This document shows positions 929 to 57,915 of a stretch of DNA of 64,000 bases, piece after piece (within the stretch, counting starts at the first letter, position 1; the number at the start of each line of letters is the position of its first letter). Position numbers and translations under genes: made by a program. The notes below the pieces were generated by a model. The model was not told where the DNA came from, made no database searches, and worked only from the letters and a program-made list of their open reading frames with translations. The stretch is taken from IMG/VR virus record IMGVR_UViG_3300028840_005860, positions 1 through 64,000 of that record. The stretch is one strand, 5' to 3'.

Positions 929-1535
929 CCGGGACTCGGACCACGTCCGTCCCCTCCTCGCTCGCCTCGCTCGCGAGGGTCGAGGGGAATGACCGGACGG
1001 GCGTCGGCCAGGCTCCCTCGAACGAGCGACGACGGCACCGCGAGCACGTCGACCGTTCGCCGCCACCTGCCTCGACCCCGAGAGGGAGATCTCTCCCCCG
1101 TCGAGACGAAAAAAAGTGCGGCGCAGGTCAGACAACTCGACCCGCCTCGACCCCACGTCGCGGCACGTCATCCGTGAGGAGCGGGCGTCAATGGAGAGAC
1201 TATAACGAAGCGTTGCAACGTGCTTGAGGTGTCGTTGGGTCTCGGGCGAGTTGGGGGTTGACGGGGCGCTCTCTTCGGTTCCGCTCCGAGGTCGTCGGCG
1301 CACGTTCCGCTTGCGCCCGAACTTCGCGGTGTGCTAGAGGGAGGCTCGTGGTCGTTTCCGGGCGCGATCGAAACGGGGTTGAACGTGCGGGTCGGACCTA
1401 CCGAGCCCTCGCGCAGGAAGGAACGCGAAGTCGACGTGTGAACTTCGATCGCGGTCGCGTCGTTGGTTTCGGGGGTTGTTTTTCGACGTGGGAGTCGTTA
1501 AAGAGTGTGCGCGCGACGTCGCGAGGAGGGTGTTG

Positions 1536-2726
1536 ATGCTCTCGCAAGTGCACGAGGTGGATCGACGGTCGTGCGGGTTCGGTGGTGCTGGCCAGGTGCC
1601 CGAGTTGAACCTGTACACGCGGTACGAGCACGGAAACCTCCCGGTGAGGGTGCATCGCGACGACGCGGGGCAGACTCGCTACTCGGTGACGCACCCGTTC
1701 GGTCGCGTCGAGACGTACCCGAGCGCGCGGCGGCTGATCAGCTCGCTCTACGGACGGGACCTGCACGTGTCGTTCGACCGCTACTTCCGGCTGGGGCGCT
1801 ACCGGAGGGAGGGGCGGCCCTCGGGCGAGGCGAACCTGCTCACCCTGCTAGACTCGTCGAGCTCGCGCTCGAGGACCAGGTCGACTCCGATCACCGTGCA
1901 CGCGCGGAACGAGCCCGGGAGGGTGATGCGAGGTACTCGGATCGTACTCGCGCGGTCCGAACGGGCAGGCGGGGCGGGTCCGCGGGGAGGTTTGGACGAC
2001 CTGGACCCCGACGTTGAGGAGTTCGTGCGGGCGCTCGAGGGGGACTTGAGGCCCCTGGACGAGTTCGTGGTGCCGACGGAGGAGATGGTGGAGGAGTTCG
2101 ACCGGGCGTTCCGGCTCGAGCTCGACCGGGTGGAGGAGCTGGTGGGGATCGACCTGGGGGAGCAGTCGCTGCGGAGCGGGTCGAGGTACAAGGCGGACGA
2201 GGTGCGTCGGCTCTTGTGGAAGGGGTTCGCGGGGAGGATGCTGTCGCAGGGCTACGACCCGGAGGAGGTCTTGCAGGAGATCTACAAGGGGCTGCTGGTA
2301 CGGAACGGCGGCAGGTGTCCGTGGGACGCGCGCAAGTCGACGTTCGGGCACTACGTGCACATGGTGATCTCGTGCGTGCTGACGAACTACCACCGGAAGC
2401 AGGTGCGGAGGATCGACCGGGACGCGGTGCCGCTCGAGGTGGGGAGGGACGGCGAGGATCGGGACGTGGACGTGGGGCAGTGGGGTTCGTGCGACATCTG
2501 GCACGGGTCGGAGGTGACGGACCAGACGCTGCTGGTCGAGCTCGCGGGGCATCTCGACGAGGTGGCGGACGAGTGCCCCGAGGCGCAGCTCGGGCGCGAG
2601 ACGCGGACGGGACACAGGCCGTCCTTCGTGTCGAAGGCGCTCGCCTGGCTGCGGCGCCACACCGCGGCGTGGGCCCTGCAAGGTGACATGGCCGCCCTCG
2701 TTCCCGCGCGATTCCTCGCCAACTAG
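1536..2726 (+). CDS. ECF-like RNA polymerase sigma factor with long N-terminal extension
   Basis: AGGAGG before ATG 1536; region-2-like YDPEEVLQEIYKGLL...WDARKSTFGHYVHMVISCVLTNYHRK; short region-4-like TGHRPSFVSKALAWLRR. Confidence 0.6.
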   Translation: MLSQVHEVDRRSCGFGGAGQVPELNLYTRYEHGNLPVRVHRDDAGQTRYSVTHPFGRVETYPSARRLISSLYGRDLHVSFDRYFRLGRYRREGRPSGEANLLTLLDSSSSRSRTRSTPITVHARNEPGRVMRGTRIVLARSERAGGAGPRGGLDDLDPDVEEFVRALEGDLRPLDEFVVPTEEMVEEFDRAFRLELDRVEELVGIDLGEQSLRSGSRYKADEVRRLLWKGFAGRMLSQGYDPEEVLQEIYKGLLVRNGGRCPWDARKSTFGHYVHMVISCVLTNYHRKQVRRIDRDAVPLEVGRDGEDRDVDVGQWGSCDIWHGSEVTDQTLLVELAGHLDEVADECPEAQLGRETRTGHRPSFVSKALAWLRRHTAAWALQGDMAALVPARFLAN

Positions 2727-3533: not shown

Positions 3534-3773
3534 TTAGAGGTGGCGGCCGCCGGGTCCGGGAGGGTTTTCGGGGGCCGTATCCTTACTTAAGGCGCGCCGG
3601 ATGGAGATAGAGAGGAGGGTTGGGTACTTGGTGGAGGCTTCGGGATCGAGGAGGACGTAGTCGAGGGGGCGTTCGGGGACCTTGGACGCGGCCTCGAGGA
3701 TGAAGTCCTGCTGCAGCTCGAGGACGAGGCGGTCGAGGAGCTTCTCGGTGCGTGCTGGAAGGCGGGAAGTCAT
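3534..3773 (-). CDS. small paralog B (79 aa)
   Basis: MTSRLPARTEKLLDRLVLEL. Confidence 0.6.
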   Translation of the reverse strand: MTSRLPARTEKLLDRLVLELQQDFILEAASKVPERPLDYVLLDPEASTKYPTLLSISIRRALSKDTAPENPPGPGGRHL

Positions 3774-3782
3774 GGAGCTCGT

Positions 3783-3950
3783 TCAGAGCGGCAGGGTGCG
3801 GGCCGGGTTGTCGTTGGCCTTGCGGACCATGTCCTTCAGCAGGTAGAGGAATGCCTTGTAGAGGACGGAGTCCTGTACCTCGAGCTCGCCGATGAGCTCG
3901 TCCACGAGGGAGTCTAGCAGTCGTTGGGTGCGTGCCGGGAGCGGAGTCAT
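3783..3950 (-). CDS. small paralog A (55 aa)
   Basis: MTPLPARTQRLLDSLVDELIGEL..., read manually; same GAGCTCCATGACT start context as paralog B. Confidence 0.6.
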   Translation of the reverse strand: MTPLPARTQRLLDSLVDELIGELEVQDSVLYKAFLYLLKDMVRKANDNPARTLPL

Positions 3951-4152
3951 GGAGCTCTCGTGGGGTTCTACCCCTTCAGGGGTCGTGGTGGGCGAGGATC
4001 CGGGATTTCGTGACGCCCGAGCGCGAGGAGCCCGGGGTTTGCAGTGGGTGCTCGAGCGCGAGACGGCCTCGCAGGGCCCTTTCCTGGGCCTTTCAGGTCC
4101 GGAGGAGCCCGGAGTTTGCAGTGGGTGCCGTACAGAGGCGGTTCGAAGGGAG

Positions 4153-4239
4153 TAGAATGAGCAGTCGGCGTGGGTGTCGACTTCCTGCGTTCTTCATCAA
4201 GGGCTCCCGGGAATGGTCTCGGGGGCCCTCCTTCTTGTT
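4153..4239 (+). ncRNA. candidate sRNA 1 (TAGAAT -10, 5' hairpin, pyrimidine linker, terminator)
   Basis: TAGAAT 4153; GTCGGC-gtgggt-GTCGAC hairpin; 12-bp terminator stem with ATGG loop and U-rich tail. Confidence 0.5.
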
Positions 4240-4313
4240 CGTGGGGGGGTTCTTCGGCCCTCAGAGGTCCGGGAAGGGTGGAGAAGTGTCGAGTTGGGGG
4301 GTCCGGGAGGGTG

Positions 4314-4393
4314 TAGAATGGGAGCGGTCGACGTGGTTGTCGACTCTTCGGCATTTTCCAGGCCCCGGGAATGGTCTCGGGGCCTTCTTTTTT
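4314..4393 (+). ncRNA. candidate sRNA 2, paralog of sRNA 1
   Basis: TAGAAT 4314; GTCGAC-gtggtt-GTCGAC hairpin; GGCCCCGGGA-atgg-TCTCGGGGCC followed by TTCTTTTT. Confidence 0.5.
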
Positions 4394-4614
4394 CTCGTGT
4401 AAGTTCTTCGGGAGGTCCGTGCAGGTGGTGACCGACGATATGGTGCCTGGGGAGAGCCCAGGACAAGGCTTGACTGGGGCCGCACTGAAACAGCAGTCGG
4501 TCAACTCACGATCCCTGGAGGAATACGGGACCTCCAGGGGTCTTTTTTTGCCCTGGAAACCCGGTTCGGGGGTGAAAGGTGGCGTGCCGGGTCGCTTTTC
4601 GGTCCCTCGGGGCG

Positions 4615-4640
4615 TGTAAAAACGTCGGATACGTCGTGTA
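4615..4640 (+). promoter_or_regulatory. class I phage promoter TGTAAR-N14-CGTRCA (first of 15 copies)
   Basis: Copies on + at 4615, 9942, 10186, 11937, 14057, 15573, 17834, 21996, 24512, 33635; on - at 8332-8357, 30840-30865, 31538-31563, 39889-39914, 56174-56199; spacer counted as 14 nt in each. Confidence 0.8.
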
Positions 4641-4647
4641 GGGGGTC

Positions 4648-5139
4648 ATGAAGATCGGCATCAAGAGCTACCGAAGCTGTGCGGGCAACGAGGGAGACGC
4701 CTTCTCCTGCACGCTCTACCTGGACGGCAAGAAGGCCGCGCTCGTCAAGTACGACGGGTGGGGAGGCCAGTACGACTACGACTTCACGTTCGCGGACGGG
4801 AGGCCTTGGGGCGGTCCGACGTGTCTGAAGTTCAAGGAGCACGTGGAGTCGCTGCCGGAGCGGACGTGCTCTTTCGACGATCCGGGGACGGGGGAGCCCG
4901 CGAAGGTCGCGGTGAACATGGACATGCTGGTGGAGGACGCGATTCAGCTGATGCTGGAGAACCGGCAGCTCAGGAGGTGGTGTCGGAACGAGACGCTGTT
5001 CAGGGTGAAGGGCGACGACGAGGGTTCGTGGCGCCGACTGAACGTGAAGTTTCCGGGCAACGAGGGCCGCGTCAGGTACTACCTGTCGAGGGAGCACGGC
5101 GACGCGATAGAGGAGATCGCCAACGAGAGGTTCGCGTGA
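4648..5139 (+). CDS. phage hypothetical protein
   Basis: 163 aa ORF, typical GC3-rich codons, ATG 7 nt after class I promoter. Confidence 0.8.
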   Translation: MKIGIKSYRSCAGNEGDAFSCTLYLDGKKAALVKYDGWGGQYDYDFTFADGRPWGGPTCLKFKEHVESLPERTCSFDDPGTGEPAKVAVNMDMLVEDAIQLMLENRQLRRWCRNETLFRVKGDDEGSWRRLNVKFPGNEGRVRYYLSREHGDAIEEIANERFA

Positions 5140-5140
5140 G

Positions 5141-6241
5141 ATGAGACGAGCGAAGACCGAGGATCTAGACTACCTGGCCACCCAGGCGGCAGTCAGGATA
5201 CTGGCGCACAGGCCCGTGTCCGAGGGGTCGGAGGGGCCCGGACCGTGGAGCGACTCCAAGTTGATGGACGCGGTGGTCAGTCGGCGCGGCGACCTCGTGC
5301 AGATCGAGGTGTGGGACAGGAGCCAGAAGGTGGCGTTCCTGGAGATCCATCCCGGGACGTGGGAACGCGTGAAGTTCGTCGTGGGGGAGTGGCTCCTGGC
5401 CCTGTTTCGCCTCGACGAGATCCCCTCGTACCTGCACGAACGCGTGGGCGGGGCCGCGAGCCCGCGCCCCAGGGTCGGGTCTCGCGGCCTGTACTACGTT
5501 CTCTATCACCGGAGGGGGCGGGATCGTACGATCCTGCTGGTCGAGAGCGACATGGAGTTGGAGGACCTGAACGGGGCGTTGGGCCCGCTCGACCTGTACG
5601 CGCGCGAGGTTCCCGAGGAGATGGCGGCGTCGGTCTCGGAGGTGATGCCGCCGTGGACGTGGGCTCGGGAAGTCGGGATGTTCGTCAGGCCGGTGAGGGT
5701 GGGGAAGGAGGCGCGGCTGGACGTCCTGCGCACGCCGGATCCCGTCGAGGATCCTGCCGAGCCTCCCGTCGCGGGGTCGGAGAAGGAGCTGCTCGAGGAG
5801 GGGAGGCTGCTTCGCGAGGTGCTGCAGGAGGAGAGGAGGGCGATCCTCAAGCTCCGCGGAGGCGCCGAGCCGCCGGTCCTGTGGAAAGTGGCCTGCGAGT
5901 ACGACCTCGAAGACGAGGCGTGGAGGTGCCTGCGTGGGCTGGCGCTTCCTCCGGGCGTCGAGCTCGAGGACGTTCGTCGGATCGTCGACGCGCTCGCCGT
6001 GGCGTTTGACGATCGGGCGGTGCTCCTGGGCCGAGACGAGGACTCCGACGTGCTGGAGTGGTTTTACTGGCACTGGACCCGCGTCGTGCCCGCGGCGGTC
6101 CTGGATCGCGTCTGGACGGACCTGGGTCGGAGGTCCCAGCACGCGCTGTACGTGGACGGGTTGAGGAGCCTGGAGCCGCGAAACATCTCGCCCGCGTGGG
6201 TCGAGGCACGTCGACCCACGGTCGGGGAGCCGCAGGCATGA
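5141..6241 (+). CDS. hypothetical protein
   Basis: 366 aa ORF coupled to its neighbours. Confidence 0.75.
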   Translation: MRRAKTEDLDYLATQAAVRILAHRPVSEGSEGPGPWSDSKLMDAVVSRRGDLVQIEVWDRSQKVAFLEIHPGTWERVKFVVGEWLLALFRLDEIPSYLHERVGGAASPRPRVGSRGLYYVLYHRRGRDRTILLVESDMELEDLNGALGPLDLYAREVPEEMAASVSEVMPPWTWAREVGMFVRPVRVGKEARLDVLRTPDPVEDPAEPPVAGSEKELLEEGRLLREVLQEERRAILKLRGGAEPPVLWKVACEYDLEDEAWRCLRGLALPPGVELEDVRRIVDALAVAFDDRAVLLGRDEDSDVLEWFYWHWTRVVPAAVLDRVWTDLGRRSQHALYVDGLRSLEPRNISPAWVEARRPTVGEPQA

Positions 6242-6838: not shown

Positions 6839-7711
6839 ATGAGTTTCGACATGGACAGAGACGAACTGAAGGAGTGGATCCGCGAGGGCGAGCTCGACAC
6901 CATCTGGGCGGCCTACGAGACGGCCGTAACCGAGCGCGACGAGGCGATGAGGCGGACGGAGCAGGAACGTGAGGGCCACTACACCGATCTCGCGAGGCAG
7001 GTGGAGGCCCGCGAGCGGGCCGAGGCCGAGCGCGACGGCCTGAAGAAGGCGGTGCGCGACGCCAGGGCCATCCTCGACGAGATGCTGCCGGATGCGATTT
7101 TCATGTCGAACGCGCACGCAAGCACGGATTACGGCGACGTGTCCGACCGCGGCTGCGACCTCGTGTTCAACATCGAGCGGTGCCACAAGGCCCTCGCCGC
7201 CGTTCCCGCGCGCAGGCAGGTGGGCGCCCTCGAGCGCTTGGTCGCGGACCTGGAGACGGCCTGTGCCGATCACGACGGTGCCGGCGGCCCTCCTCTCGTG
7301 TCGACCGAACGGATCCGCAGCCTCGTCGCCGCCACCGTCGAAGCTCGAGCGGAGGAGGCGGAGGGGGAACTGAAACGGGCACTCGATGGCGAGGAAAGTT
7401 GGCGGCAACAGATGCTTCGAGAGCACGACCTCAAGGAGAGGTTTCGCGCCCAACGGGACCTGCTGGTCGCGGCGCTCCGGGAGCAGCTCGAGGCAGAGCA
7501 GCTTTGGGTGGACGATCCGACCGCGGCGTTCGAGCAGAGGGCGGCTGCGTTCCGGCGCGAGACGGGTTACGTGGCGCCGGGGAAGGACGTTTCCGCCGAT
7601 CTGAACCCCTCGGACGAGTACATGGAGCAGCGGCAGGTCAGGTGGCGCGAGTGGCACGACGCGAGGCGAGCCGAGCGCCACGAAAGGTGGCGCAGGCTCC
7701 TCGACGGCTAG
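6839..7711 (+). CDS. coiled-coil hypothetical protein
   Basis: GGAGG SD; MSFDMDRDELKEW; E/R-rich helices. Confidence 0.7.
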   Translation: MSFDMDRDELKEWIREGELDTIWAAYETAVTERDEAMRRTEQEREGHYTDLARQVEARERAEAERDGLKKAVRDARAILDEMLPDAIFMSNAHASTDYGDVSDRGCDLVFNIERCHKALAAVPARRQVGALERLVADLETACADHDGAGGPPLVSTERIRSLVAATVEARAEEAEGELKRALDGEESWRQQMLREHDLKERFRAQRDLLVAALREQLEAEQLWVDDPTAAFEQRAAAFRRETGYVAPGKDVSADLNPSDEYMEQRQVRWREWHDARRAERHERWRRLLDG

Positions 7712-14029: not shown

Positions 14030-14283
14030 AAGTCCGGCAGCGCAGCCCGCGCGGGATGTAAGATCTTCGGGGGCGTCGTACAGGGGTCACGATGATCGTG
14101 AAGGCTTACGACGCCAGCGGGACCGAGCCCGAGAAGCTCGTGTGGGAAGGAGACCTCGAGGAGCTCCTCCGGGAGTACCAGGGCGACCTCACGGCGAGCG
14201 ACGTCGCGCAGCTGCGGTGGCTCCAGGTGGGGCAGTCGGCCACGGTCGGAGGCGGCTTTCGCGTGGAGCGCGTGGGATGACGT

Positions 14284-14344
14284 TTTTCGTGAAAATCGAC
14301 GGAACCGGGGAATGGGACTGATGGCCCGTTGGTAATGCACATGA
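14284..14344 (+). promoter_or_regulatory. class II motif TTTTC-n-GAAAA ... GGGAATG-N7/8-TGGCCCGTTGGTAATGCASATGA
   Basis: Copies at 14308, 22240, 33668 (+), 34929-34965 and 56385-56420 (-); partial copy near 39820-39875. Confidence 0.75.
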
Positions 14345-14357
14345 GACGGAGCAGACC

Positions 14358-33597: not shown

Positions 33598-33714
33598 GCG
33601 GCCGAATTCGGCCGAACTGGGTCCCCTACGCGAATGTAAAATTCTCGTCCTCATCGTGCATGGGTCAGGAATAGAAAGCATGGCCCGTTGGTAATGCAGA
33701 TGAGGAGCGAAGAG

Positions 33715-34908: not shown

Positions 34909-35014
34909 TTGGTCTCTCCTTCGTGCTTTCATCTGCATTACCAACGAGCCACAGGTTCCATTCCCGGTCCCGCCAACTTTTCTCGGAAAAGTTGGACCTC
35001 GGGCGCGGACGCCG

Positions 35015-35443: not shown

Positions 35444-35729
35444 CGTACTCGGTGTACTCGCCCGGAAGTCAGGCTGCTAGAACCTCTTGCGCAGCCGACG
35501 CCCCTGCGCCACGTCGAACATCAAGTTCCTCGAGGGGCCCGACAGGGAACGCCAGAAGGAGAAGGAGGTCCGGTACTCGAGGGGCACCTGGTCGAGCTCG
35601 AGATGCGCCACGCTCTGCTGGAGGTTCCGCGCCCCTCTCGAGCGCAGGTACTCGAGCAGCCGGGCGAATTCCCGCTCCACCCCGTTGAGGGACTGCTCTC
35701 GAGACGACATCAGACGGCTCCTTCATCGG

Positions 35730-35801
35730 CACCCCCGGCTGGACTCGAACCAGCGACCTCGGATTCCGGAGACCCGTGCTCTTCCGCTGAGCTACGAGGG
35801 T
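35730..35801 (-). tRNA. tRNA-Arg(CCG)
   Basis: Full cloverleaf, loop CTCCGGA; no complete encoded CCA. Confidence 0.9.
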
Positions 35802-35802
35802 G

Positions 35803-35879
35803 TGGTGACCGGACCTGGACTTGAACCAGGGACCTCCTGCGTGTCACACAGGCGCTCTAACCTGCTGAGCTACCCGGCC
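35803..35879 (-). tRNA. tRNA-Val(GAC)
   Basis: Cloverleaf, loop GTGACAC, encoded CCA. Confidence 0.9.
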
Positions 35880-35882
35880 ATC

Positions 35883-35958
35883 TGGCGTTCCCGGTAGGGC
35901 TCGAACCTACGACCTCCGGTTTAGGAAACCGGTGCTCTTCCTTCTGAGCTACGAGAAC
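35883..35958 (-). tRNA. tRNA-Arg(CCT)
   Basis: Cloverleaf, loop TTCCTAA, encoded CCA. Confidence 0.92.
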
Positions 35959-36536: not shown

Positions 36537-36613
36537 TGGTAGGCCCGGTGGGACTCGAACCCACGACCTCGACCTTATAAGGGTCGAGCTCTGACCAGCT
36601 GAGCTACGGGCCC
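36537..36613 (-). tRNA. tRNA-Ile(TAT)
   Basis: Cloverleaf, stem CGACC/GGTCG, loop CTTATAA, A73, encoded CCA. Confidence 0.92.
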
Positions 36614-48370: not shown

Positions 48371-48446
48371 TGGGGCGTAGGTCAGTTGGCAGACCGCCGG
48401 GCTCTGAACCCGGAAGTCGAAGGTTCGAACCCTTCCGCCCCAGCCA
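48371..48446 (+). tRNA. tRNA-Gln(CTG)
   Basis: U1-A72, loop CTCTGAA, G73, CCA. Confidence 0.92.
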
Positions 48447-48447
48447 C

Positions 48448-48518
48448 TCGGGAGTCGTCTAGCGGTCGGACGCCTGACTTTGGATCAGGAAACCGGGGTT
48501 CGAGTCCCTGCTCCCGAG
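48448..48518 (+). tRNA. tRNA-Gln(TTG)
   Basis: U1-A72, loop CTTTGGA, G73. Confidence 0.92.
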
Positions 48519-48779
48519 CTGCCGTCAGCGTCGAAGGCTGTTCATCAGTTTGAGGAGCCTCTCGCCCCGGAGCGCGGCTTCCTTGCATTCTTCCAGGTCG
48601 CACAGGTCCTCGCAGAACGTCCCGTACTGGTTCGTCACGGTGATCGGCTTGCCCGAGCGTGTGCACAGGATCTCCACGCTGTCCGGGGCTGTCCAGTGAT
48701 GTCGCGAGTCACACATCATGCGTACCAGTCTCTGTCTCTGGGCCGTCTCGCCCCCGTCACGGTACCACCTCTCCATCTA

Positions 48780-56000: not shown

Positions 56001-56161
56001 TTGCACAGGAACATGAACTCGGGACGCTTGGCGTTCCGCATCGTGAAGTAACAGGCGCCCCGCTTCCCGTGAAGCTCGTACACCGTCCGGCCGTCCTTGC
56101 CCTCCCGACTCGTCACCGTGAAGGCTCGACCGTTGACTTTGATCTCGTTCGGGGTGCTCAT
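53084..56161 (-). other. run of short hypothetical genes (e.g. 53084-53329, 54266-54706, 54690-55085, 55082-55471, 55919-56161)
   Basis: Co-oriented coupled ORFs downstream of class I promoter 56174-56199. Confidence 0.65.
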
Positions 56162-56199
56162 CCTCTTGCCACCTGCACGGGACCCCTGACGTTTTTACA

Positions 56200-57350
56200 C
56201 CGACTCCGTGAAACCGCACGGCGCCCGCGTGCCGGCCACCGTCCTCGCTCCACTCCCATCGGCCCCTCAGACGCCCTCTCGCACCCCCCGGTTGCAGGGG
56301 TCCCGGTCACCACGGCCATCGCCAACACGGCGTGTGAGACGGCCGGGAGGAGGTGCAGGGTTCTGAGAATCTGTCCCACGGTCTGATGTGCATTACCAAC
56401 GGGCCATACGCCCCATTCCCGCCCCCAGACGCTTTTTTCAGAAAACCGACCCGAGAGCGTGAATTCGCCGCTCGAGGGCCATATACAAGTGGGGGAACGC
56501 CCTAAAACAGGCCCCCTGAGGCCCTCAGACGCCCCCACGCGCCTTTCCCCCTACAAAGGGCCCCACAGGGAGGCCCTCACAGGGGCCTCCCCAGGGCGGC
56601 CCTACGTCCAAGTTCGGCCCTCTGGCGCCGGATCCCGTTCTGGCCCTCGATTCTGAAACCCCCACGCCCCACAGGGGCCCTCCTGAGACGCCCTCCCTGG
56701 CGAGGCCCCATAACACCCCGGCCGCCACGGGCGGCCCTCCTGGCACCTCAGACGCCCCCACAGGCCCTATCTTGAGGTGATGGGCCACATGGGCCACCAC
56801 TGGCACCCTCATAACTTTGCGCTGTGTGCGCATTTCCCTAGGGTCTCCAGACGTGGCCCATGTGGCCCACCCTCATCTACATGCCCGACCCTGGGCACTC
56901 GCTCCTCTCACCCACCCGCCCCACCTCGAAGCACACGCCGAGGCTCCTCACCCGCCACGGGGCCCGGCTTCTCGGTGCACAACAGTTGTCCACCAAGCCG
57001 GCCCGAGTAGACAAACCTTGTGCACGGCCGCTCCGCACACGCCCGCGTTCCTTGAGGTTCGACAGCTCGAGTCGATCCTCGATCACCTCACACGCCCGAA
57101 CTTCACGATCGATGTGGTCCGCGATCTCGGAGGTCCGCGTTCACGGACCGCATGCTCGACTCGCTCTGGCTCTCGATCGATCTCGTCGGGCTCGTGCGTG
57201 TTCGAGAGAGGGACGCGATCTCACAGAACCGTATAGAAGAATTGTGGCACGTGGGGCCCCACCCGAATTCGCCATATCCGACCTGTCCGCGTCGGAAGGC
57301 CCGAAAAACGAACCCCTTTTCAGAAAGCGCTTGTAGACCTTTCCAGGGCC
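56200..57350. other. long non-coding, C-skewed repeat region (candidate origin or terminus)
   Basis: CTCAGACGCCC at 56266, 56524, 56747 (variant at 56683); perfect 17-bp inverted repeat 56781-56797 / 56853-56869. Confidence 0.5.
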
Positions 57351-57357
57351 TAGTATT

Positions 57358-57915
57358 GTGTTCAAACGGATGCCGCGTCCTCGCACCACCCGATGGCCGA
57401 CCAGAGACTCCCTGCGAAAGGACCTTTCACGGGGAAAGACCCTCAAGGAAATCGCGACCGACTACGGGCATTCCGTCGGATGGCTCAACAACGTCCGAAG
57501 ACGATACGGCCTTGGCCCCGAGCCTTGCGGTCCTCTGGTCCTGGAGGGAGACCTGCTCGCCCTGTTCCTGGGGTCCATGCTAGGGGACGGCAGCCTCGGC
57601 AAGAAGGACAACCGGATGTGGTTTTCCGAAGGTCATAGCGTGGCTCAGAAGGGTTACGTCGAGTGGAAGCGTCGACGGTGGGGTGTCTGGGCCGGAAACC
57701 TCCACAGGAGCGCCCCGCGCCTGACGATCGACGGAGATCGCGTCGTTCGAAAGCGCGAGCACTGGAGTTTCACGACACGCTCGTCGCCCACGTTCGTGCC
57801 TTGGGAGGAGGCATTCTACGGTTGGAAGCGGAAGGGGAGGCGCGCCAAGCGCTTTCCCGAGGAGGTACTTGGTCACGCGACTCCGCTGATGATCGCCGCG
57901 GGCGCGTGCCCGTGA
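57358..57915 (+). mobile_element. LAGLIDADG homing endonuclease, C-terminally truncated
   Basis: N-terminal HTH; LFLGSMLGDG, FSEGHS..QKGY, FTTRS.P.F, FY; ends at TPLMIAA where a second WxxDDG motif is expected. Confidence 0.75.

What the first reader, a model, noticed from the sequence alone, without database searches (positions are those of the whole stretch)
4153..4393. Family of three paralogous small RNAs (4153-4239, 4314-4393, 24427-24500)
Seen: each unit has a 6-bp 5' hairpin with a GTG..T loop, a pyrimidine-rich linker (TTCCTGCGTTCTTC, TCTTCGGCATTTTCC, TTTGCTCCTCTCC) and near-identical terminators sharing GGGA-ATGG-TC. The stems differ in sequence but still pair. The first two units begin 5-7 nt after TAGAAT. 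There is no credible ORF. Inference: trans-acting sRNAs whose CU-rich seeds resemble anti-Shine-Dalgarno sequences. They could repress leadered host mRNAs while the phage's leaderless mRNAs escape.
Basis: partly seen in the sequence, partly recalled or inferred. Interest (0 to 1): 0.7.

Follow-up and report, generated by a model that had tools for sequence, protein, structure and literature searches.

The report
Sibling small-RNA cassettes in a jumbo phage
Two tandem promoter-to-terminator cassettes in a 230-kb uncultured phage look like genes for ~70-nt non-coding RNAs, with a promoter-less copy at a gene's 3' end, but the idea that they block ribosome-binding sites is not supported.

Summary
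Three + strand units (4163-4240, 4326-4395, 24427-24501) share a 5' hairpin, a 14-18-nt unpaired linker and a strong terminator. The terminator core GGGAATGGTC occurs exactly three times in the 230-kb genome. A covariance model finds only these three.

Units 1 and 2 are an old tandem duplication. Each starts about 5-7 nt after TAGAAT, the phage's host-type -10 box, and lies in a stretch with no coding signal on either strand. They are therefore plausible stand-alone early small-RNA genes. Unit 3 has no promoter and is the 3' end of a DUF4265 gene's mRNA.

Between units 1 and 2 the hairpins are conserved (88% and 19/19) but the linker is not (29%). The linkers pair with a Shine-Dalgarno sequence no better than random intergenic 16-mers. 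Most phage genes carry Shine-Dalgarno motifs. The anti-Shine-Dalgarno mechanism is therefore disfavoured, and function more likely lies in the two UGG-loop hairpins.

There is no RNA data, no Rfam match and no copy in relatives, in 185,579 species' genomes or in metagenomes beyond this phage. The main rival is a LoaP-like hairpin-plus-terminator control module, because the phage encodes a NusG-like protein.

The parts
4139..4158 (+). Promoter P1: G-rich block followed by the -10 box TAGAAT (4153-4158)
   Evidence: TAGAAT occurs 14 times in the genome, about 11 of them intergenic, with the shared context gggnGTAGAATgg. Two genes start 7 nt after it. The block GGTYCGRRGGGWG before the box is shared by P1 and P2.
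4163..4182 (+). u1 5' hairpin: 7 bp including one G-U pair, loop GUGGGU. Predicted transcript start at its base.
   Evidence: RNA folds. This segment is 88% identical to u2 across the start and hairpin.
4183..4199 (+). u1 unpaired pyrimidine-rich linker, 17 nt
   Evidence: Unpaired in the minimum-energy and centroid folds. 29% identity to the u2 linker.
4200..4240 (+). u1 intrinsic terminator T1: 13-bp stem, AUGG loop, interrupted U tail
   Evidence: The 19-nt apex is identical to that of u2.
4300..4319 (+). Promoter P2: G-rich block followed by TAGAAT (4314-4319)
4326..4345 (+). u2 5' hairpin: 8 bp, loop UGGU
4346..4359 (+). u2 unpaired linker, 14 nt
4360..4395 (+). u2 intrinsic terminator T2: 11-bp stem, AUGG loop, good U tail
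4398..4549 (+). Possible third, divergent short unit. It has a class-2 promoter (TGTAAG 4398-4403, GTGCAG 4419-4424), a hairpin at 4446-4462 and a strong terminator T3 at 4511-4549.
   Evidence: Promoter class. Fold. The hairpin has a 25-nt, 96%-identical paralogue at genome 68689-68713 on the minus strand. The ORF through it has third-position GC of 0.65.
4615..4641 (+). Class-2 promoter directly before the leaderless-type start of gene 4648-5139, so that gene need not depend on P1 or P2
   Evidence: The same 17-mer lies 19 nt before gene 144283.
24427..24448 (+). u3 5' hairpin: 6 bp with a 10-nt loop, or alternatively 10-12 bp with loop UGGUC. It begins 24 nt after the stop of gene 24071-24403.
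   Evidence: Five of six stem pairs differ on both sides from u1 while the loop keeps CGUG..UUGGU (read).
24449..24466 (+). u3 linker, 18 nt
24467..24501 (+). u3 terminator: 14-bp stem, AUGG loop, five U
24512..24538 (+). Class-2 promoter immediately after the u3 terminator, serving gene 24561-24743

Best explanation
u1 and u2 are two tandemly duplicated, self-contained transcription units of a 230-kb, 66% GC uncultured phage. The host is bacterial and probably actinobacterium-like.

Host RNA polymerase would start at the TAGAAT promoters. It would transcribe a hairpin that begins at or next to the 5' end, then 14-17 unpaired nucleotides, and stop at a strong intrinsic terminator. This would give stable RNAs of about 68-75 nt early in infection. 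A third, divergent short unit (4398-4549) follows. The first rightward gene (4648) has its own promoter, so the cassettes look insulated from it.

u3 is a promoter-less copy of the same hairpin-spacer-terminator module. It forms the 3' end of the DUF4265 gene's mRNA.

What is shown: the anatomy, the paralogy, the lack of coding signal and the promoter-class context. What is inferred: that the units are transcribed, and how they act.

Selection has kept the sequence of the two hairpins, all of whose loops display UGG, while the linker has drifted to random. I therefore think the RNAs act through the hairpins as structured ligands for a protein, as a decoy or a recruitment site, and that the linker is a spacer rather than an antisense seed. 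I put about 0.3 on that mechanism.
For: - Exact anatomy and folds.
- Only three copies in the genome.
- TAGAAT context shared with about 11 intergenic sites and with leaderless gene starts.
- No coding signal on either strand.
- Segmental conservation after an old duplication: hairpin 88%, terminator apex 19/19, linker 29%, spacer after the terminator 43%.
- G-U pairs make the structure specific to the + strand.
- Class-2 promoters directly after T2, T3 and the u3 terminator show that downstream genes have their own promoters.
- Precedent: abundant, stable small non-coding RNAs come from a ~500-bp non-coding stretch behind the early promoter of Cluster A mycobacteriophages (PMC5712189). Similar RNAs are reported in Rhodococcus phage WC1 (PMC10986025).
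Against: - No expression data; no RNA run was listed.
- All copies of the phage in three DNA runs and four contigs are identical, and no relative carries the units. There is therefore no independent covariation.
- The T1 tail is interrupted, so read-through is possible.
- A hairpin followed by this very terminator apex also occurs at ordinary gene 3' ends in unrelated contigs. u3 alone needs no special explanation.
- No binding partner is identified. The one protein-RNA fold attempt was not run.
Confidence: 0.5

Rival explanations
1. Conditional terminators. The small hairpin plus intrinsic terminator is a cis-acting control module. A phage factor, for example its NusG-like protein, recognises the hairpin on nascent RNA and lets polymerase read through T1-T3 and the u3 terminator. 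The short RNAs are the 'off' products, as in the LoaP dfn leader or lambda pR'-tR' 6S RNA (the lambda case is from my own knowledge).
For: - The order promoter, small hairpin, intrinsic terminator is the LoaP leader layout (PMC12691694).
- The phage encodes a NusG/UpxY/LoaP-like protein at genome 189344-189901 (NF033644 E 3e-5, Pfam NusG E 0.013, both below cut-off; language-model neighbours are NusG clusters).
- The hairpin and terminator are conserved while the linker is free.
- u3 sits between two co-directional genes.
- Three terminators stand in a row before the rightward genes.
Against: - Every terminator is followed at once by another promoter, and gene 4648 and gene 24561 have their own class-2 promoters. 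Read-through is therefore not needed.
- The loops are UGG-type, not the UNCG type that LoaP binds.
- The NusG-like gene lies 185 kb away and its match is sub-threshold.
- No alternative antiterminator fold exists.
Confidence: 0.2
2. Plain punctuation. The units are duplicated terminator-promoter cassettes that insulate neighbouring transcription units in the early region. Any short RNAs are by-products with no function of their own.
For: - Terminators are followed directly by promoters at three places.
- The region is a patchwork of repeated modules, including dead promoter copies at 4264-4286 and 4412-4431.
- The same terminator apex arises in many unrelated genomes.
Against: If the RNA did not matter, the -10 box and the 5' hairpin sequence should have decayed like the linker and the spacers, which are at 29-43% identity. 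Instead both copies keep TAGAAT with its context, and the hairpin stays at 88%.
Confidence: 0.15
3. The units are trans-acting small RNAs whose CU-rich linkers mimic the anti-Shine-Dalgarno sequence and repress leadered host mRNAs, while leaderless phage mRNAs escape.
For: - The linkers are 67-71% pyrimidine and unpaired.
- The u3 linker contains CUCCU. The 3' arm and tail of u1 contain CCUCCUU.
- The phage has a leaderless-type promoter class.
- C-rich small RNAs that pair with G-rich ribosome-binding regions are known in Gram-positive bacteria (own knowledge; B11/6C, PMC10470900 listed but not read).
Against: - The linker sequence is not conserved.
- Pairing with a Shine-Dalgarno sequence is within the intergenic background.
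- At least 56% of phage genes have Shine-Dalgarno cores.
- The best pairings with phage start regions are no better than those of shuffled linkers.
- The best anti-Shine-Dalgarno-like strings lie inside the terminator stem or beyond the termination point.
Confidence: 0.07
4. DNA-level sites. The inverted repeats GTCGRC-N6-GTCGAC just downstream of the -10 boxes are operators for a phage repressor, and CCGGGAATGG is a protein-binding DNA motif.
For: - The position at +5 to +22 is typical for operators (own knowledge).
- CCGGG(G)AATGG also occurs in 3 of 5 copies of another conserved promoter-like block.
Against: - G-U pairs break the DNA symmetry, and two different C-to-T changes keep RNA pairing in the terminator apex.
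- The u3 stem has a different sequence but still pairs.
- No other TAGAAT promoter carries the GTCGAC repeat.
Confidence: 0.05

Closest known systems
Abundant small non-coding RNAs made from the early promoter Pleft region of Cluster A mycobacteriophages (L5, D29, StarStuff), and the non-coding RNAs of Rhodococcus phage WC1
   Same: They are early, host-polymerase-driven, stable, non-coding transcripts. They come from a non-coding stretch of several hundred bp between an early promoter and the first gene, in phages of high-GC Gram-positive hosts. Their function is unknown (PMC5712189; PMC10986025).
   Different: Those RNAs are 100-500 nt, are processed from one transcript and have no evident canonical terminator. 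Here there are separate ~70-nt cassettes, each with its own promoter and strong terminator. There is no sequence similarity to any deposited phage.
LoaP-type antitermination leader (dfn operon of Bacillus velezensis)
   Same: A promoter is followed by a small RNA hairpin and then an intrinsic terminator. A NusG paralogue is the trans factor, and this phage encodes a NusG-like protein.
   Different: LoaP binds a UNCG hairpin, whereas here the loops are UGG-type. Here each terminator is followed by a new promoter rather than by a long operon. The phage protein's match to LoaP and UpxY is below cut-off.
Short terminated phage transcripts such as lambda oop RNA and the pR'-tR' 6S RNA (own knowledge, not tested here)
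   Same: They are ~77-194-nt RNAs defined by a constitutive promoter and a nearby intrinsic terminator in a phage regulatory region.
   Different: oop is antisense to cII, and 6S RNA is the unextended late transcript. No antisense target or downstream dependence is seen here.
Sibling small RNAs and protein-sponge RNAs such as CsrB/RsmZ-type (own knowledge, not tested here)
   Same: Several paralogous copies carry the same short motif in every hairpin loop (here UGG), separated by variable spacers.
   Different: No partner protein is known, there are only two loops per RNA, and CsrA-type proteins are not known in Actinomycetota.

Membership tests
Any described RNA family (Rfam 15) | Score at or above the family's gathering threshold | tested here: not met
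   Only tRNAs pass in the 64-kb window. Permissive scans of 3950-4650 and 24380-24570 give nothing above 19.4 bits against thresholds of 38 or more.
Intrinsic (Rho-independent) terminator | GC-rich hairpin directly followed by a U-rich run on the transcribed strand | tested here: met
   Stems are 11-14 bp with tails CCUUCUUGUU, UCUUUUUUCU and UUUUU. The T1 tail is interrupted.
Stand-alone small-RNA gene | Own promoter | tested here: inconclusive
   u1 and u2 have TAGAAT with the phage's consensus context, but this is a consensus match only. u3 has none.
Stand-alone small-RNA gene | No protein-coding potential | tested here: met
   Third-position GC is 0.48-0.70 against 0.87-0.92 in neighbouring genes. 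There is no codon periodicity on either strand.
Stand-alone small-RNA gene | Discrete transcript of the predicted size | not testable with these tools
   No RNA run was listed for the locus. The three runs that hold it are DNA.
Small RNAs that pair with the Shine-Dalgarno sequence (anti-Shine-Dalgarno-like seed) | A conserved, unpaired C/U-rich motif complementary to GGAGG | tested here: not met
   Linkers are 29% identical. Duplex energies are -5.6 to -8.7 kcal/mol against a background of -5.5 +/- 2.7.
LoaP-type antitermination leader | Small hairpin upstream of an intrinsic terminator in the same transcript | tested here: met
LoaP-type antitermination leader | UNCG-type hairpin loop bound by LoaP | tested here: not met
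   The loops are GUGGGU, UGGU and UGGUC. The requirement is described in PMC12691694.
LoaP-type antitermination leader | Cognate NusG paralogue encoded | tested here: inconclusive
   A 185-aa protein at genome 189344-189901 matches UpxY (E 3e-5), NusG (E 0.003) and LoaP (E 0.017), all below cut-off. Its Atlas neighbours are NusG clusters.
Type III toxin-antitoxin (ToxI-like RNA repeats, terminator, toxin gene) | Tandem 34-45-nt RNA repeats before a terminator, and a ToxN/AbiQ-like gene downstream | tested here: not met
   The repeat period is about 160 bp and each copy has its own promoter. The 163-aa downstream protein has no Pfam hit and belongs to viral families of unknown function.
CRISPR mini-array or solitary repeat unit (RNA anti-CRISPR) | CRISPR-type repeats, or identity to a host repeat | tested here: not met
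   There is no array-like repeat in the genome. The two-hairpin pattern is absent from 185,579 species' genomes except for chance coding hits.

The most novel reading that the evidence does not exclude
The units are early phage RNAs that tilt translation towards the phage's leaderless messages. Their pyrimidine-rich unpaired stretches and anti-Shine-Dalgarno-like 3' ends would titrate ribosome-binding sites of leadered host mRNAs. The evidence weakens this reading but cannot exclude it, because the host and its transcripts are unknown.
Probability: 0.05. Interest if true: 0.85.

Novelty: new member of a known kind. Interest (0 to 1): 0.33.

Why it matters
Phage-encoded small RNAs are known. 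Few are understood, and almost none in phages of high-GC hosts, where abundant early non-coding RNAs of unknown function have been seen repeatedly.

This locus offers a compact, testable case. It has two sibling ~70-nt cassettes in which selection marks the hairpins rather than the single-stranded part. It also has a promoter-less copy at an mRNA end, and the phage encodes a NusG-like factor.

If the hairpins prove to be a protein-recognition or termination-control module, that would add an RNA-based switch to jumbo-phage gene timing. If they are only punctuation, the locus is ordinary.

Tried and rejected
- **Similarity to deposited phages:** none for 3900-4700.
- **Relatives through flanking genes:** genes 4648-5139 and 5141-6241 have no relatives in IMG/VR. 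Gene 5141-6241 also has none among 5.8 billion proteins, apart from the same phage.
- **Other contigs and runs of the phage:** 100% identical, so they give no variation.
- **Relatives through the large terminase:** nine related viral records with 53-76% identity were found. They have no pattern match, no covariance-model match, and no homologue of the tested neighbour genes 23101-23940 and 6839-7711.
- **Metagenome scan for the 19-nt terminator apex:** it returned the same phage plus unrelated terminators and coding hits. L084 looked promising (gene stop, hairpin, same terminator) but is unrelated by translated comparison.
- **Scan of species genomes for the two-hairpin pattern:** 29 chance hits.
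- **Targets in the phage:** linker duplexes with 309 start regions are no better than those of shuffled linkers.
- **Small-protein reading:** ORFs starting at the AUG in each terminator loop lack coding signal.
- **CRISPR-like arrays:** none.
- **Replication-origin signal:** GC skew only follows gene direction.
- **DNA-operator reading:** the GTCGAC repeat is absent from other TAGAAT promoters.
- **Protein-RNA complex prediction:** not run by the tool, so it is no evidence either way.
- **Structural alignment of hairpin 1:** MAFFT did not put the u3 stem in register. The compensatory pairs were therefore read by hand and not scored.

Full report
**Source.** The window is the first 64 kb of a single 230,069-bp contig with 65.7% GC. 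It is a metagenomic virus record with a CheckV completeness estimate of 90%. The same phage is present, letter for letter over 3700-4700, in a 237-kb ENA contig, in two short contigs and in three DNA runs from sediment and seawater samples. There is therefore no population variation to exploit. No RNA run was listed for the locus.

Read from the sequence and folded as RNA, each unit has three parts.
- A 5' hairpin. u1 is 4163-4182, 7 bp, loop GUGGGU. u2 is 4326-4345, 8 bp, loop UGGU. u3 is 24427-24448, 6 bp, or alternatively 10-12 bp with loop UGGUC.
- An unpaired, 67-71% pyrimidine linker of 17, 14 and 18 nt.
- A strong terminator with an 11-14-bp stem, an AUGG loop and a U-rich tail.

The 10-mer GGGAATGGTC occurs exactly three times on both strands of the genome. 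About 0.5 copies are expected from composition. All three lie at the apex of these terminators on the + strand. The u1 and u3 terminators are 90% identical over 30 nt. A covariance model built from the three scores them at 90, 81 and 75 bits, and nothing else in the genome scores above 22 bits.

The folds are strand-specific. G-U pairs on the + strand become mismatches on the minus strand. Two different C-to-T changes in the terminator apex each keep a wobble pair.

The u3 stem differs from the u1 stem on both sides at five of six pairs and still pairs, while its loop keeps CGUG..UUGGU. I read this by hand. With three sequences this is suggestive only.

**The region is non-coding.** ORFs through the units, including those that start at the AUG in each terminator loop, have third-position GC of 0.48-0.70. 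Real neighbours have 0.87-0.92. Positions 3871-4695 show no codon periodicity on either strand.

**Promoter context.**
- TAGAAT precedes u1 and u2 by 4 and 6 nt. Genome-wide it occurs 14 times, about 11 of them intergenic, with the shared context gggnGTAGAATgg. Two genes start 7 nt after it.
- Twelve more genes start 5-9 nt after a TAG(A/G)(A/G)T-type box.
- From my own knowledge, this is the usual -10 box of high-GC Gram-positive housekeeping promoters. I therefore infer host-polymerase, early transcription.
- The closest cultured relatives by large terminase are mostly phages of Gordonia, Streptomyces and Rhodococcus, though at only 22-26% identity.
- A second, very clear promoter class, TGTAAR-N15-GTRCAG, has 17 copies against 0.5 in shuffles. 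In most copies a start codon follows 5-8 nt after CAG.
- Copies of this second class lie directly after T2 (4398-4424), 6 nt before the ATG of gene 4648 (4615-4641), and directly after the u3 terminator (24512-24538).

So every terminator here is followed by a fresh promoter, and the downstream genes do not need P1 or P2. The 700-bp gap thus reads as P1-u1-T1, P2-u2-T2, a third divergent short unit ending at T3 (4511-4549), and then the promoter of the first rightward gene.

**u3 is different.** It has no promoter. It begins 24 nt after the stop of a DUF4265 gene. A hairpin followed by this same terminator apex is found at ordinary gene 3' ends in unrelated contigs. u3 is best read as a duplicated terminator module at an mRNA end.

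**What selection has kept.** u1 and u2 are an old tandem duplication of about 160 bp. Identity by segment:

| Segment | Identity, u1 vs u2 |
|---|---|
| Start plus 5' hairpin | 88% |
| Terminator apex | 19 of 19 |
| Linker | 29% |
| Spacer after the terminator | 43% |

The promoter boxes are intact in both copies, while two further promoter-like copies nearby have decayed. This argues that making the RNA matters. It also argues that the hairpins, in sequence and not only in shape, are the functional part. All six hairpin loops contain UGG.

**The anti-Shine-Dalgarno idea.**
- A shared seed should be the most conserved segment, yet here the linker is the least conserved.
- The linkers pair with a generic Shine-Dalgarno sequence at -7.2, -5.6 and -8.7 kcal/mol. 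Random intergenic 16-mers of this genome give -5.5 +/- 2.7.
- At least 56% of 309 crude gene calls have a Shine-Dalgarno core, against 26% in the background.
- The best linker pairings with phage start regions are no better than those of shuffled linkers.
- The host is unknown, so host targets could not be examined.

**Main rival.** The phage encodes a sigma region-4 protein (63 bits, above cut-off). Just upstream lies a 185-aa protein with weak but consistent NusG, UpxY and LoaP matches, and its language-model neighbours are NusG clusters. LoaP-type antitermination uses exactly a small hairpin followed by an intrinsic terminator in the leader (PMC12691694). The units could therefore be conditional terminators. 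Three points count against this: promoters follow each terminator, the loops are not UNCG, and the protein matches are below threshold.

**Comparison and novelty.** There is no Rfam family. There is no similar DNA in 50,697 phage records. Nine related viral records hold no copy. The 185,579 species genomes hold none. Metagenomes hold none beyond this phage. The nearest known phenomenon is the abundant, stable, early non-coding RNAs of Cluster A mycobacteriophages and of phage WC1, whose function is also unknown.

**Verdict.** This is a real, new small family of probable phage small-RNA cassettes.

Noticed in passing
window 4398, 4615, 9942, 10186, 11937, 14057, 15573, 17834, 21996, 24512 (+); 8357, 30865, 56199 (-); genome 144250 (+); 106010, 127197, 168756 (-): There is a strongly over-represented bipartite motif, TGTAAR-N15-GTRCAG: 17 copies against 0.5 in shuffles. 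In most copies a start codon follows 5-8 nt later. It is probably a phage-specific promoter class that gives leaderless messages.
   Followed up: partly
window 14283-14345 (+), 22215-22277 (+), 33642-33704 (+), 56383-56445 (-), 34928-34990 (-): Five copies of a conserved block, GGAAT(G/A)-N13-TGGCYCGTTGGTAATGCA(G/C)AT, lie just upstream of genes. Three of them contain CCGGG(G)AATGG, the same string as the apex of the u1-u3 terminators. This may be a third promoter class. The shared string is unexplained.
   Followed up: partly
window 4025-4051 and 4102-4128: Two 27-nt direct repeats (96% identical, 77 nt apart) lie between the leftward genes and P1. They share GTGGGTG with the u1 hairpin loop. 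Their function is unknown.
   Followed up: no
window 4440-4464 and genome 68689-68713 (-): A 25-nt block, AUGGUGCCUGGGGAGA(G/C)CCCAGGAC, forms a hairpin and occurs twice. One copy is in the third short unit and one is in the leader of a minus-strand gene. One change lengthens the stem.
   Followed up: partly
genome 189344-189901 and 189906-190517 (L128:804-1361 and 1366-1977); window 1476-2726: A NusG-like gene lies next to a sigma region-4 gene. The 416-aa ORF left of the locus has a weak sigma region-2 match (E 6e-4 and 0.02). This may be a split or multi-part phage sigma system.
   Followed up: partly
window 3534-3773 (-) and 3783-3950 (-): Two small leftward genes have clearly similar N-termini (MTSRLPARTEKLLDRLV / MTPLPARTQRLLDSLV). 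They are paralogues with no family match.
   Followed up: no
genome 169351-173001 (L024:5351-9001): A RecD2-like helicase is interrupted by an intein with a LAGLIDADG domain.
   Followed up: no
L084:3942-4012 and loci L005, L042, L067, L079, L087, L096: The palindromic terminator CCCGGGAAUGGUCCCGGG plus a U run recurs at gene ends in many unrelated metagenomic contigs. One of them is another high-GC contig from the same sampling project, just before a thymidylate-synthase-like gene.
   Followed up: partly
window 56041-57570 (-): This is another long stretch without codon periodicity. It holds a TAGAAT box at 57818 and very strong terminators (for example -36.7 kcal/mol at 56557). It may carry further non-coding transcripts.
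   Followed up: no
window 29103-29174, 35728-35958, 36537-36613, 48371-48519: There are seven tRNA genes in the window (Leu, Arg x2, Val, Ile, Gln x2). Further non-periodic stretches elsewhere in the genome may be tRNA clusters, but this was not checked.
   Followed up: no
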